From positions 2,356,001 to 2,420,000 of the forward strand of contig OZ176052.1 of assembly GCA_964247055.1 (NCBI GenBank): a stretch of 64,000 nt of DNA. Reading direction: 5' to 3'. Numbering within the stretch: the stretch's first letter is position 1; each line of letters opens with the position of its first letter. The notes below the pieces were generated by a model. The model searched no databases, had not been told where the DNA came from, and saw nothing but the letters and a program-made list of their open reading frames with translations. This document shows positions 40,596-64,000 of the stretch, in pieces. The stretch comes from Paragordius varius (taxonomy: Eukaryota > Animalia > Nematomorpha). Made by a program: the position numbers and the translations under genes.

Positions 40596-41706
40596 TACAA
40601 TAAAAATCTTTTAAAGAATATTTTATCCATAGAGGCAGAATAGCTACTAAAGTAAATGCAATATACCAGTGATTTATCGTAGAGTGCAATATTGTATTTA
40701 ATATATATGAATATATTTAATAAATTTTATTAACTTACATTATTTGAAAAATCTTTTTTAATATAAATATGAAAAATAATAATTTTATATAACAGTTTAT
40801 TGATTTTAAATAGGGTTTAAGGATAAGTATTATTTCAAAAAATGCCATTTGTTAATTTAAATCTTACTAAATTCACAAATAATAATAGGTTGTGGATACA
40901 ATAGGTAAATGATAAAAATTTATTCATTCATGCTATGTACATAACAACATTTATGAGTTTTCTTGTGCCATAAAAATGTGTCAATGAAAATTTTGTATCT
41001 AATAATTTCATTTATAGATATTAAAATAATCAATATATATATATATATATATGGATGTTGCTTTTAAAAATCAATCAATAAAAAACACAATAATATATTT
41101 GATTGCTAAGATTCTATATATCATTATGAATGCGTCAATGTTTAAAAAGTGCTAATTAAAAATTACGAAATACTTAGGCATAAATAATTATGTACATTGA
41201 TTGATATTATGGGGGAAAAGTGTGAATATAAATAAGTGACTAGTTAATTTAAGAAAAAGATCTATGGTCAAATCTAAAACAAATTTTATTACACTTTCAT
41301 TTTCCAAACCGGATAAATAAGGCGACTTAAAGTTGCGCCAATTTTGGACAGCTCCTCGAATGAAATTTTGTGACAGGGGTAAACTTTGTTGAGTTCAATT
41401 ATAGCATCATTCTATAGAATCCAAAAATTTATGTTTTATATATCGGATAAAAAAGTTTTTTTAAACCTTATATTTGAATTATAATCTCCAAAAATGTTGA
41501 GAACGTAAGTTTTAGTAAAATGGTTTGCCTTCCAAGTTCATCGCTTGAAATTTGATTTTTTTAAAATAAACTAACAGACATCTTGTGAGTATGATTTAAT
41601 AAGATTGGTATATTTAAAAAATAAGTTATCCAATTTAAATTCTATTTTATTGCGGTTATGATTCTTTGTAATTGAGTGCTTATGATTTCCATTCCATTTT
41701 TTAAGT

Positions 41707-42653
41707 TTAGATAAAGGGGATTAAAGCCCACAAAAATAGAACATAGCGTTTAAATATTAGCATAAAAATAATTATAATAATGATAAAAAAACAAAAAATT
41801 GAATTAAAATTTGAAAAATAACAATAATTTTTTTTAAAAATCAGCTTTTCAAGCTTCAATAACGGTTGGCTAAACGGTTTGATTTCGGTCATATAATTTA
41901 GGATAAAGAAAGAAAATCTTAATTAACTAAATTTAAAATATACTCTAAAAATTTTATCATCATAATAAAATATGTGGCCTTTAAATGAGATTATATTCCG
42001 TGTATCAAATGGAACACCCAATTTGCGATACTTGAATGAGCTCTGAGTTTCAATTTGCTAAAATTAAATTTAAATCAAACTTTTAACAAATAGGTATGAT
42101 TTTTTAAGTTCGTGTTATAAATTAATAATTGTAGTTCAGGTAAAAAATTTAAACATTCCTTTAAATTATCAAGATTCGGAGACATTTTTACCAAAGAACA
42201 AGAAAAATCAAATAGTTGGGCAATGTTTTGGGCTTCTGATAGGCAATAATTGCCTTTATAACCAATAAACAATTCGCTACCTAGATATAAAATAATAAAT
42301 TTACCGGAAAATAAAATGTTATCTGATACAAATAAATCAAAACTGTGAAGATGTAGATTTAAATCTTTACTTAAGATCGATTGAAAATACTGCATTTTAT
42401 ATAATGTATTAACTTTATCAGCCAAAGAGGATAAAATACATATGTTGTCAATAGTGAACCCATAATCTCCAGTGAGGGATAAACATATATTATCATTTTC
42501 TGGTGCCAATTCGATTATATCCAAATCAAATTTTCTTAATATAGCAATGTATTCGTTAAACTCTGAGTGTAATTGATTGTTAATATCGATAGATGATTCC
42601 AAAATAATGTTTTTAGGGAACCTTCTAACCACGGCGTTACAAAACCGATACAT
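41707..42653 (-). CDS. DDAH-like (dimethylarginine dimethylaminohydrolase family) protein, strongly divergent; last exon uncertain
   Basis: Exons 42653-42305, 42280-42081, 42057-41944, then an uncertain terminal exon within 41917-41707. Matches to DDAH1: NAVVRRFP~HAVVRALP; YIAILRKFDLDIIELA~YVGVLGSKLGLQVVELP; LFSG/SELFIG~LFTG/REFFVG; KYRKLGVPFD~RYDKLTVPDD; KGHIF~KGHVL; LEKL~LEKV. Confidence 0.75.
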
Positions 42654-54700: not shown

Positions 54701-55061
54701 AATTTTTATCACTATGAACACCATGACCAGAATAATAGTTTATTTTATCATCAACTGGAGATTTTAAACTTTCTCCTGGTGGAGTGCTATCATGACGCAT
54801 TCGCCAAAATGCCAATGATGGATAAGCTTGGCTAATAGTTTTGGCCCGGGGTCTAACAAACTTAGGTGATTGCGTGTTAGGATTCACACCTAGGTGCTAA
54901 AAATAAAAAAACGCAAAATATACCTTTACATATATATCTGGCGCTTCTTTATCTATTTTACTTTGCCTAACATTGACATCAAAAAAAGTTCCACTTCTAA
55001 AATCAGAAGATATCTCGTCAAAATCGGGAGTTGCATGCCGCTTTGAATGATGCGCTCCCAT
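48752..55061 (-). CDS. PRKAB: 5'-AMP-activated protein kinase beta subunit (about 490-510 aa depending on the exon-1 donor)
   Basis: Exons 55061-54924 (donor ambiguous), 54896-54163, 51189-51096, 50637-50436, 49590-49316, 48832-48752. N-myristoylation-type start MGAHHSK; CBM48 PTVFRW..VWLLGSWDGW..IPMVLS..EGKHEYKFLVDDNW..NNVIEVKKSDFEVFDALADD; C-terminal PPILPPQLLQVILN..LPEPNHVMVNHLYALSIKDNVMVLSCTHRHNKKYVTTLLYKPVE*. Confidence 0.93.
52074..52096 (+). repeat. G23 homopolymer (a G17 tract lies at 22296-22312)
   Basis: Seen directly. Confidence 0.9.
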
Positions 55062-61600: not shown

Positions 61601-62295
61601 TGTTGTTGTTGCTAAGATCGATTCCGACTAACTGCAACATTGAAATTATAACTTCTCCATTCATTGCGAATACATGATCTGGCGTTTAGTTCGGATAATG
61701 TTTGGTTAATTACTTTGAGGATGTTACCCATCCAACGAGTTCTCCTTCTTCCTCTTTTACGAGCTCCACTCACTTTTCCCAGCATCAGTGACTTTTCAAG
61801 TAGGTTAAATCTCATAATGTGGCCAAAATAGTTTTTGGCGTTAGGCCACCCAGTAGCGACATTTTCGGATTAATTTTATTTACAATAATGGAGCTAGGAA
61901 TCTTGTCTGACCATTTTGTTTGGAGAAGTTTCCTCCACCATAGTTTGTAAGAATTTATTAGTCATTCGGCATATTTTTTCAGCGTCCAGCTTTCGCCCCC
62001 ATATTGTAATGTGGGGAATACTATTGCCTTGATTAATCTGATTTTGGTTTTTAGTTGGATGATGTGGCATCCAAATCCTGTTGTATATGAATGTAAATGC
62101 TTTTGCAAGGGCAATTCTTCGTTTTATTTCTGATGTAGAGTTGTTGTCATTGTTCGTAATACTGCTCCAAATACGTGTAACTGTTTACGATTTCAATCTG
62201 ATTTCCGTTGTGGATTATTGAGTTAGTTAATTAAGCTACATGTATTACCTTTGTTTTATTAAGTGAATTTTAATCCGAATTTATTGCATTCAGAT
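61601..62295 (-). mobile_element. RTE-type LINE 3' fragment, inverted close relative of 60285-60980
   Basis: Its reverse complement aligns almost base for base with 60285-60980; tail CTTAGCAACAACAAC. Confidence 0.85.
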
Positions 62296-62419
62296 GTTTT
62301 TTTTACCAAAAATATTGATTTTATACCTTCTCCGAACATTAGACATAATTATATTATATTCCTTACATACCCTTAACATATTTCTCATTAAATTCTCCCA
62401 TTCTAAGCACATTCTGTTT

Positions 62420-64000
62420 ATGCTGAAATCACGCAATCTCAGCATCCGTATCGGAACGTGGAATTTACGCGGAGCTTATAACAATAATAATTTAGATATA
62501 GTAGTTAAAGAAATGACCAAGCATAAAATTGACATGCTAGGAATTTCAGAACCACACATTCCCTCTACCGGAACTTTAAAATTTGACAATAATATACTGT
62601 ATTACTCCGGCCATGACTCGTTTAAATACAACGGTGTCGGTAAGCTAGCTAATTTATCTGACATTTTTAATCCAATCCATAAACATATAATTGCAATCCG
62701 CATACAAACAACCCCTCAACCCATTACAATCTTTCAAATTTACGCCCCTACCTCCACTTACAGCGATGACGACTGTGAAAATTTTTTACAGTGATCTCGA
62801 CTTGGCGATTTCCAAATATCAAAAAAGATATCATATTTATCTTAGGCGAATTCAATTCAATCATAGAAAAAGATAAAACGTCTTCTATGACGGGTGACAT
62901 AGGCTTGGGCATAAAAAACGAGAGGAGATAGATTGATTGAATTTTGTGCTAACCATCGTTTCTTCGTCTCAAACACCTTATTTAAACAGCCCAAACGACG
63001 TCTATACACTGGCGTTCCCCGTGTCAGAGATACCAAATTCACTTCATATTAGGTATGGTTAAATATAAAAGTTCATTTAATAATGTCAAATGCCTACCAG
63101 GATCGGATTGCTTCAGCGACGCACAACCTATTGATCGCCAAACTCCGCATTAAATTACAACTCCCCAAAATATCCAAACCCACCAGAACAAGATTAAATT
63201 ATGATACAATTGACGACAAGTTTAGCACCGCTTTATCAAATCGTTTCGAGTGTCTTGATCATAATTCCGAAAACTATAACATTATAAATTCCTTTTGGAA
63301 CGCTATACACACAATCTGCAGAGATACAGCGGACGAATTTATTCAGCCTCTCAAACATACAAAACAAAAAATAAAATTGACAACAAAAAGTCGTGAGATT
63401 GCAGAAAAACGTAGAGAATCCAAAATCAAAGCAAATGGGATAGTACAAACAACTACAGCGAATTTTAAAAGATTACATGAGAGGACAAAAATAATTATTA
63501 TGACCAACTTGTGAAAAATTAGAAAGAGACGCCAAAAATAACCGAAACCCTTTTGCCCATACAAACAATATTATTCCACACAAAAAAGCTTTTTACAAGA
63601 GACCTACGAGAAACGACAACAACTCAATCGTCACCGAAAAAGACGAAATCCGCAACTGGCTTAAACACAAGTAGACTTTACAACGTAAATTATTCCCAGA
63701 CTATCAACGAACCTACTCAAGAGAAAGACCCACCTAAAATGAAAGAAGAAGAAGTTGAACACGCTATAAAACACTCTAGTATAGGCTATTCAGAGGGGCA
63801 CAGAGACATCCATACTGAAATAATAAAATATATCCCAATCGATATACTTACCAAATTATTTCAAAATATATTTGAGATGGAAATAATTCCTGAGGATTGG
63901 TGTACATCAACTATGATTCTTATTTTAAAAGAGGGTAATCCAGAACTGTGCGACAACTATCGCACCATAACGCTCATTAACCAGGTGGCCAAAGTTTTCC
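62420..64000 (+). mobile_element. RTE-type LINE, 5' part (APE endonuclease plus RT start), frameshifted; runs off the window
   Basis: IRIGTWNLRG..IDMLGISE..YSGH..NGVG..ITIFQIYAPT; GEFNS; later DIHTEIIK..EDWCTSTMILILK.GN..CDNYRTITLINQVAKV. Confidence 0.85.

What the first reader, a model, noticed from the sequence alone, without database searches (positions are those of the whole stretch)
42281..42304. 24-nt in-frame intron: spliced, or an exonised ancestral intron?
G|GTAAATTTATTATTTTATATCTAG|GT is 3n and stop-free, encoding KFIILYLG if retained. Removing it gives LFSG-SELFIG, gap-free against DDAH1 LFTG-REFFVG, at what I recall is a conserved phase-1 intron. It is either a real micro-intron or an intron that shrank until read-through was tolerated. 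Gene predictors would miss it.
Basis: partly seen in the sequence, partly recalled or inferred. Interest (0 to 1): 0.75.

Follow-up and report, generated by a model that had tools for sequence, protein, structure and literature searches.

The report
24-base in-frame intron, hairworm DDAH-like gene
A 24-base stretch inside a gene of a probable horsehair worm sits exactly where horseshoe crab, flour beetle and another hairworm have an intron, and this genome has similarly tiny introns in essential genes, so it is most likely a real, spliced micro-intron that merely happens to be readable as protein.

Summary
The sequence is there, on the minus strand (42304..42281). It is GT...AG, 24 nt, 87.5% A+T, a multiple of three and stop-free inside a 192-codon open frame. 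It interrupts the first base of the Gly codon in ...ILFSG|SELFIG...

The gene is a fast-evolving DDAH homologue. Its best relative is a Gordionus hairworm protein (E 6e-14). A profile of the two plus a mite DDAH1 hits solved DDAH1 at E 2e-45.

No homologue has eight extra residues at this site. Limulus (2,847 nt), Tribolium (55 nt) and Gordionus (42 nt) each have a phase-1 intron in exactly this codon. The 24 nt is therefore what remains of an ancient intron, not a coding insertion.

Introns of 22-32 nt are real in this genome. I verified them by exact continuity of residue numbering in ribosomal protein uL2 (22 nt) and myosin (27, 28, 32 nt). CCT genes give motif-level support (23, 23, 24, 25 nt). 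The same DDAH-like gene also needs a 23-nt intron removed.

Best reading: an ordinary spliced micro-intron of the "translatable" kind (about 75%). Partial or full retention cannot be excluded without RNA data. Earlier notes of this scan had already reported the micro-intron class elsewhere in this genome.

The parts
42305..42653 (-). Exon 1 of the DDAH-like gene (ATG at 42653; 349 nt; ends with the first base of a Gly codon)
   Evidence: ORF. phmmer hit to Gordionus P0001 over residues 2-189, E 5.8e-14. Exon lengths and phases.
42281..42304 (-). The finding: 24-nt GT-AG intron, phase 1, 3n, no in-frame stop, 87.5% A+T
   Evidence: Sequence. Same codon and phase as introns in Gordionus (42 nt), Tribolium (55 nt) and Limulus (2,847 nt). 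Homologues lack the 8 residues.
42081..42280 (-). Exon 2 (200 nt)
   Evidence: Exons 1+2 total 549 nt, which is 183 codons.
42058..42080 (-). 23-nt GT-AG intron (GTTTGATTTAAATTTAATTTTAG), phase 0. It must be removed, because retention gives an in-frame TGA and a frameshift
   Evidence: Same position as the 39-nt intron of Gordionus (ILK|QME) and an intron of Limulus (VLK|RIE).
41944..42057 (-). Exon 3 (114 nt: QIETQSSFKYRKLGVPFD...DDKIFR)
   Evidence: tblastn of P0001 residues 189-223, E 0.018. Coordinates.
41412..41943 (-). Ordinary 532-nt intron (GTATAT...CTATAG), phase 0
   Evidence: Same position as the 617-nt intron of Gordionus and an intron of Limulus.
41289..41411 (-). Exon 4 with TAA stop (NDAIIELNK...ELSKIGATLSRLIYPVWKMKV*)
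   Evidence: tblastn of P0001 residues 229-265, with ELSK.G.LSRL shared. Sequence. The exon lengths sum to 786 nt, in frame.

Best explanation
The 24 nt is a genuine U2-type GT-AG spliceosomal intron. It is the shrunken descendant of an ancient phase-1 intron of the DDAH gene and belongs to a class of 22-32-nt micro-introns that this genome uses routinely alongside introns of hundreds to thousands of bases. It is most likely removed from most transcripts, giving a 261-residue DDAH-like protein with the conserved ...ILFSG-SELFIG... hairpin. Its length (3n) and lack of an in-frame stop make it a 'translatable intron'. An unspliced transcript would escape nonsense-mediated decay and yield a protein with 8 extra hydrophobic residues. 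Shown: the sequence, the conserved position and phase, the absence of the insert in homologues, and the existence of equally short obligatory introns in the genome. Inferred: that this particular intron is spliced, and how efficiently.
For: (1) Position and phase. Limulus has ACA G|GTAAAA...CATAG|GT CGA. Tribolium has ACT G|GTAAGT...TTTTAG|GA CGG. Gordionus has ACT G|GTTTTC...TTTTAG|GC AGA. The window has TCC G|GTAAAT...TCTAG|GT AGC. (2) No homologue has residues between TG and RE (P0001, P0002, solved DDAH1, Limulus, Tribolium). (3) Micro-introns are real here. In uL2 a 22-nt intron separates residues 1-46 from 47-94 of solved uL2 chains. In myosin, introns of 27, 28 and 32 nt separate Pfam Myosin_head positions 48|50, 196|~197 and 313|314. 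CCT genes have 23-, 23-, 24- and 25-nt introns inside conserved N-terminal motifs. (4) The same gene needs its 23-nt intron removed to stay open. With that, all four exons form one 786-nt frame ending in a motif shared with Gordionus. (5) The features match the verified set. The 5' end GTAAAT is identical to that of the myosin 27-nt intron, the 3' end is TAG, A+T is 87.5% against 77-86% in the five myosin introns, and the length is mid-range.
Against: There are no RNA data, so splicing of this intron is not observed. Retention keeps the frame open. The intron-encoded FIILYLG resembles the exon-encoded NILFSG, so aligners, and a very low-confidence AlphaFold model (pLDDT 43), put the intron-encoded strand in the hairpin. 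The spliced product is 4 residues shorter than its homologues just upstream. The orthologous Gordionus intron is also 3n and stop-free, a coincidence of roughly 1% that could hint at tolerated read-through. A second 24-nt, 3n, stop-free GT..AG in exon 1 (42413..42390) looks similar but is probably coding, so sequence features alone do not predict splicing.
Confidence: 0.75

Rival explanations
1. Leaky or regulated retention. The intron is spliced in some transcripts and retained in others, and both mRNAs are translated because retention is invisible to nonsense-mediated decay. This would give two isoforms differing by 8 residues in a beta-hairpin.
For: It is 3n and stop-free. The orthologous Gordionus intron is also 3n and stop-free at 42 nt. 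The intron-encoded ILYLG mimics the exon-encoded ILFSG. Very short introns are spliced inefficiently in Microsporidia, as cited in PMC13644364.
Against: About one micro-intron in seven is expected to be 3n and stop-free by chance at this composition (my estimate). The hydrophobic peptide is what any T-rich sequence encodes. The two species' intron peptides show no evident similarity (by eye; not aligned).
Confidence: 0.13
2. Fully exonised intron. The 24 nt is no longer recognised by the spliceosome and is now constitutive coding sequence.
For: The frame stays open. Read-through is only 4 residues longer than the homologues over this segment, and the intron-encoded strand can align to VLFTG. 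The protein is fast-evolving (35% identity to Gordionus) and seems to lack the catalytic Cys, so constraint may be relaxed.
Against: GT and AG are intact at exactly the ancestral boundaries. Composition is intron-like. The length and ends fall within the verified micro-intron class of the same genome. The ILFSG match to VLFTG is better than the ILYLG match.
Confidence: 0.07
3. The locus is a dead or dying gene, so the question of splicing is moot.
For: Pfam finds no DDAH domain in the window protein or anywhere in the genome. No matching protein is in the large collection. The catalytic residues seem lost.
Against: A 192-codon open frame in 26% G+C DNA has a chance of about 3e-8 per start. All four exons keep frame with canonical splice sites and a stop at the expected place. 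The C-terminal motif ELSK.G.LSRL is shared with Gordionus.
Confidence: 0.04
4. A chance GT..AG inside a lineage-specific coding insertion that is unrelated to any intron.
For: The ORF contains 15 in-frame, stop-free GT..AG segments of 18-36 nt.
Against: It starts at the exact base where three other species have a phase-1 intron. The chance of that is about 2%.
Confidence: 0.01

Closest known systems
Translatable introns (3n, no in-frame stop) as described for Paramecium and other eukaryotes (Jaillon et al. 2008, from my own knowledge; review PMC11334263)
   Same: A tiny (20-34 nt) GT-AG intron whose retention neither shifts the frame nor introduces a stop, so nonsense-mediated decay cannot detect it.
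   Different: This is an animal with the standard genetic code (three stop codons). Whether this genome is depleted of such introns could not be measured on the 305 kb available.
Ultra-short introns of animals: myxobolid myxozoans (median 22-27 bp) and Dicyema japonicum (PMC13644364)
   Same: Canonical GT-AG introns under 30 nt at conserved positions between conserved exons, in a parasitic lineage with an A+T-rich genome.
   Different: In this genome the micro-introns coexist with introns of 0.5-3 kb in the same genes. The lineage is most likely Nematomorpha, which that paper does not mention.
Orthologous DDAH intron in Gordionus sp. (GCA_954871325; 42 nt), Tribolium castaneum (55 nt) and Limulus polyphemus (2,847 nt)
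   Same: Same codon and same phase 1, between LFTG and REFF.
   Different: The length is only 24 nt here, and no sequence similarity between the introns was evident by eye.
DDAH1 (dimethylarginine dimethylaminohydrolase; Pfam PF19420; solved structures 3p8p, 2jai)
   Same: Homologous over the whole length by profile (E 2e-45). Three of its four exon boundaries match those of arthropod DDAH1; the intron-1 site has no intron in the window.
   Different: The window protein does not reach Pfam significance on its own. The hairworm proteins have LSRL where DDAH1 has the catalytic-Cys motif, so they are probably pseudoenzymes.

Membership tests
U2-type GT-AG spliceosomal intron | GT at the 5' end and AG at the 3' end | tested here: met
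   GTAAAT...TCTAG.
U2-type GT-AG spliceosomal intron | Same position and phase as introns of orthologous genes | tested here: met
   Phase 1 in the Gly codon of LFTG|REFF in Gordionus, Tribolium and Limulus.
U2-type GT-AG spliceosomal intron | Removal restores colinearity with homologous proteins | tested here: met
   The junction is gap-free against DDAH1, P0001 and P0002. A 4-residue length difference remains in the loop upstream.
U2-type GT-AG spliceosomal intron | Length that the organism's spliceosome can handle | tested here: met
   Obligatory introns of 22-32 nt in uL2, myosin and CCT genes of the same genome.
U2-type GT-AG spliceosomal intron | Absent from mature mRNA | not testable with these tools
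   No transcript data were reachable for this genome, and no protein from the locus is in the collection.
Translatable intron (retention invisible to NMD) | Length a multiple of three and no in-frame stop in the upstream exon's frame | tested here: met
   24 nt. The 192-codon ORF reads through it.
Exonised intron (constitutive coding) | Orthologous proteins carry the corresponding residues | tested here: not met
   No homologue has an insert at TG|RE.
DDAH family (PF19420) | Significant match to the family profile | tested here: inconclusive
   The window ORF has no Pfam hit and the own-genome scan is blank. P0001 scores 22.3 bits against a cut-off of 23. A profile of window ORF + P0001 + P0002 hits DDAH1 at E 2e-45, probably driven largely by the mite sequence.
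DDAH family (PF19420) | Catalytic Cys-His-Asp/Glu triad | tested here: inconclusive
   By eye on hand alignments, the Cys motif reads LSRL in the window and in P0001, against SLCLL in P0002 and LTCCS in Limulus.

The most novel reading that the evidence does not exclude
The intron is kept 'translatable' on purpose. In both hairworm lineages the intron at this ancient site is 3n and stop-free (24 and 42 nt). Here its 3' half encodes a copy-like strand (ILYLG) of the exon end (ILFSG). Splicing and retention would then give two foldable isoforms of a DDAH-derived pseudoenzyme, making a micro-intron act as an optional 8-residue cassette.
Probability: 0.08. Interest if true: 0.6.

Novelty: new member of a known kind. 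Interest (0 to 1): 0.42.

Why it matters
On its own this is one more intron. It matters as a clean test case. The site is ancient and precisely datable: 2.8 kb in Limulus, 55 nt in Tribolium, 42 nt in Gordionus and 24 nt here. At its smallest the intron has become invisible to mRNA surveillance. If RNA data show it is spliced, it adds to the evidence that a bilaterian spliceosome handles 22-24-nt introns. Those are currently credited in animals only to myxozoans and dicyemids (PMC13644364). Gene predictors with minimum intron lengths near 40 nt would then mis-model such genes. That would bear on reports of low BUSCO scores or gene loss in hairworms. If it is partly retained, it would allow a direct measure of the cost of translatable introns in an animal.

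Tried and rejected
Ciliate origin, suggested by the tiny AT-rich introns, was rejected. The ORFs use the standard code, the window holds animal genes (BK channel, AMPK-beta, LINE), and introns of 0.5-1.2 kb are present.

A dicyemid-like genome of uniformly short introns was rejected for the same reason.

Direct searches with the 192-residue ORF found nothing for DDAH: Pfam, PDB phmmer, the word-indexed protein collection and PF19420 over the own genome. Only the exhaustive HMMER search found relatives.

Ab initio counts of GT..AG segments joining two open frames, with null-frame and reversed-dinucleotide controls, showed no usable enrichment at any length on 305 kb. I therefore could not measure the length distribution or any depletion of 3n stop-free micro-introns.

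Micro-intron-like decoys in long ORFs numbered 15 on the sense strand against 27 on the antisense strand. This is suggestive only, because strand composition confounds it.

AlphaFold on the read-through ORF with a 3-sequence alignment gave pLDDT 43. That is unusable, so no fold search was run.

Two other 3n stop-free candidates in long ORFs (C1 block) lie in proteins I did not recognise and did not search, so they could not be judged.

A candidate 'intron 1' in the window (42413..42390) was rejected. It lies two codons from the ancestral site, and removing it leaves the segment 6-7 residues short.

I did not seek it by other routes.

Exons were handled one by one, by reference.

Full report
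**What is at the coordinates.** The window is about 26% G+C. The reverse complement of 42281-42304 is GTAAATTTATTATTTTATATCTAG, with G before it and GT after it. It lies within a 192-codon ORF on the minus strand, 42653..42075. Read through, the ORF gives ...DNILFSGKFIILYLGSELFIGYKG... The segment is 24 nt, has no in-frame stop and is 87.5% A+T, against 71-73% in the two flanking exons.

**What organism and what kind of genome.** The window carries animal genes. These include a BK/slowpoke-like first exon, followed by an intron of about 1.2 kb, an AMPK-beta gene and LINE-like ORFs. It belongs to a 110.5-Mb assembly of 44 contigs. The nearest relative of the gene in question comes from Gordionus sp. 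(GCA_954871325), a hairworm with 26.9% G+C. Earlier notes of this scan also call the genome a hairworm. I did not test that identity independently beyond this one gene.

**What gene.** Direct searches with the ORF found no DDAH: Pfam, PDB, the indexed protein collection and PF19420 against the whole genome.
- The exhaustive HMMER search found three proteins. P0001 is from Gordionus (267 aa, E 5.8e-14, 35% identity). P0003 is an alternative model of it. P0002 turned out to be an eriophyoid-mite DDAH1 (79-81% identical to Aceria-like proteins).
- All three hit PF19420 weakly.
- A profile of the window ORF with P0001 and P0002 matches solved DDAH1 over its whole length at E 2e-45.
- The gene is therefore a fast-evolving DDAH homologue.
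- tblastn with P0001 located the rest of the gene. After a 23-nt GT-AG segment (42080-42058) comes exon 3 (42057-41944), then a 532-nt intron, then exon 4 (41411-41289), which ends in TAA.
- The exon lengths are 349, 200, 114 and 123 nt. They add up to 786 nt in frame, which is 261 codons, against 267 in Gordionus.
- The C-terminal motif ELSK.G.LSRL is shared with Gordionus, while the catalytic Cys seems absent from both. This points to a conserved pseudoenzyme rather than a dead gene.
Exons were treated one by one, by reference.

**Is the 24 nt an intron?** Yes, by position.
- Mapping P0001 onto its genomic locus shows short introns of 42, 42 and 39 nt and one of 617 nt.
- The second of these splits ACT G|GT...AG|GC AGA, the Gly codon of VLFTG|REFFIG, in phase 1. 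That is the same codon and phase as TCC G|GT...AG|GT AGC in the window.
- Limulus DDAH1-like has a 2,847-nt intron there (ACA G|GTAAAA...CATAG|GT CGA). Tribolium DDAH1 has a 55-nt one (ACT G|GTAAGT...TTTTAG|GA CGG).
- The other three Gordionus introns also sit at Limulus positions. The window keeps two of them (23 nt and 532 nt) and has lost the first.
- None of the homologous proteins, including solved DDAH1, has residues between TG and RE.
- The ORF holds 15 in-frame, stop-free GT..AG segments of 18-36 nt at 11 start positions in 576 nt. The chance that one begins at exactly the ancestral intron base is about 2%.

**Can 24 nt be spliced in this animal?** The genome answers this.
- In a myosin gene (L016), reading-frame switches and in-frame stops inside the motor domain are resolved by GT-AG segments of 27, 28, 32, 22 and 27 nt.
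- Pfam coordinates of the flanking exon translations are contiguous across the first three: Myosin_head 48|50, 196|~197 and 313|314.
- In the ribosomal protein uL2 gene (L022), a 22-nt GTATTTTTTTTTATATTTTTAG separates an exon matching residues 1-46 of solved uL2 from an exon starting at residue 47.
- CCT subunit genes have 23-, 23-, 24- and 25-nt introns inside the conserved N-terminal motifs. These are supported by motif reading and by one Pfam start coordinate, not by full two-sided contiguity.
- These micro-introns sit in the same genes as introns of several hundred bases.
- The finding's intron is mid-range in length. It shares its 5' hexamer GTAAAT with the myosin 27-nt intron, ends in TAG like most of the set, and has comparable A+T content.
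- The DDAH-like gene itself cannot stay open unless its 23-nt intron is removed.

**What remains open.** Nothing here shows RNA.
- Retention would keep the frame and add 8 hydrophobic residues.
- The 'gap-free' argument is only local. Between the LNL motif and SELFIG the spliced protein has 17 residues, the homologues 21 and the read-through 25. MAFFT and tblastn align the intron-encoded ILYLG, rather than the exon-encoded ILFSG, to VLFTG.
- ILFSG is the better match residue for residue, but a read-through protein could plausibly still fold.
- An AlphaFold model was too poor to use (pLDDT 43).
- The orthologous Gordionus intron is also 3n and stop-free. By my estimate from composition, about one micro-intron in seven would be so by chance here and about one in twelve at 42 nt. 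The coincidence is therefore about 1%, but it was noticed after the fact.
- A second 24-nt, 3n, stop-free GT..AG in exon 1 (42413..42390; 79% A+T) lies two codons off the ancestral intron-1 site and is probably coding. Looking like a micro-intron is evidently not sufficient.

**Attempts at genome-wide statistics failed.** Counts of GT..AG segments joining open frames were no higher than the null-frame controls on the 305 kb I could obtain. I therefore cannot say whether translatable micro-introns are depleted here as they are in Paramecium (PMC11334263).

**Comparison with what is known.**
- The feature is a 'translatable intron' in the sense used for Paramecium.
- A 2026 survey states that, among animals, introns under 30 nt are known only from myxobolid myxozoans and Dicyema (PMC13644364).
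- I found no paper describing them in Nematomorpha.
- Two earlier follow-ups of this scan reported the same class on other parts of this genome. My uL2, myosin and CCT cases are independent of theirs and agree with them.

**Verdict.**
- The intron reading is supported: an ancient phase-1 DDAH intron reduced to 24 nt.
- It is most likely spliced like its neighbours (about 0.75).
- Partial retention has a probability of about 0.13 and full exonisation about 0.07.
- As a single feature it is a new member of a known kind.
- Its interest lies in being a ready-made assay for micro-intron splicing and for retention that escapes nonsense-mediated decay in an animal.

Noticed in passing
window 42058-42080 (-): A 23-nt GT-AG intron (GTTTGATTTAAATTTAATTTTAG) in the same gene. 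It must be removed, because retention gives an in-frame TGA and a frameshift. It sits at the position of a 39-nt Gordionus intron and a Limulus intron.
   Followed up: yes
window 42390-42413 (-): A second 24-nt, 3n, stop-free GT..AG (GTTAATACATTATATAAAATGCAG, 79% A+T) in exon 1. It lies two codons from the ancestral intron-1 site and removing it would leave the protein 6-7 residues short, so it is probably coding. The ancestral first intron seems to have been lost cleanly.
   Followed up: partly
L022:2193-2214 (+) = G000 C1:9042193-9042214: A 22-nt intron in the ribosomal protein uL2 (RPL8) gene. The flanking exons match residues 1-46 and 47-94 of solved uL2. This is the strongest single proof of micro-intron splicing capacity in this genome.
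   Followed up: yes
L016 (G000 C5:4356500-4363500, minus strand): A myosin gene with five micro-introns (27, 28, 32, 22 and 27 nt) next to introns of about 760-870 nt. Three are confirmed by contiguous Pfam coordinates.
   Followed up: yes
L004, L005, L007 (CCT subunit genes); L026: Further 23-, 23-, 24- and 25-nt introns near the 5' ends of CCT genes, and a 23-nt one between two RRM domains.
   Followed up: partly
window 54897-54923 (-): A 27-nt GT-AG segment (GTATATTTTGCGTTTTTTTATTTTTAG) after the myristoylation-type MG... start exon of AMPK-beta. It is 3n with its own TAG in frame.
   Followed up: partly
G000 C2:9807614-9809314, C6:5283631-5285832, C5:9316440-9322045, C1:8855483-8859250: CCT and myosin genes show open frames of 590-1,719 codons in which Pfam matches lie hundreds of bases apart in a single frame. 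These may be large in-frame insertions in conserved proteins.
   Followed up: no
window 41289-41411 (-) and P0001 C-terminus: Both hairworm DDAH-like proteins read LSRL where arthropod DDAH1 has the catalytic-Cys motif, and the His of HLKS also seems replaced. They are probably a conserved pseudoenzyme.
   Followed up: partly
L014:3001-4547 (Gordionus sp.): All three short introns of the Gordionus orthologue are multiples of three (42, 42 and 39 nt). The middle one is stop-free.
   Followed up: partly
window 62294-63514 (+): ORFs that look like a LINE endonuclease by eye (not searched), pointing to a transposon near the window's end.
   Followed up: no
literature: The Gordionus genome paper reports only 71.6% BUSCO completeness. 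If hairworm genes carry many introns under 35 nt, predictors may be breaking genes, which could inflate apparent gene loss. Untested.
   Followed up: no
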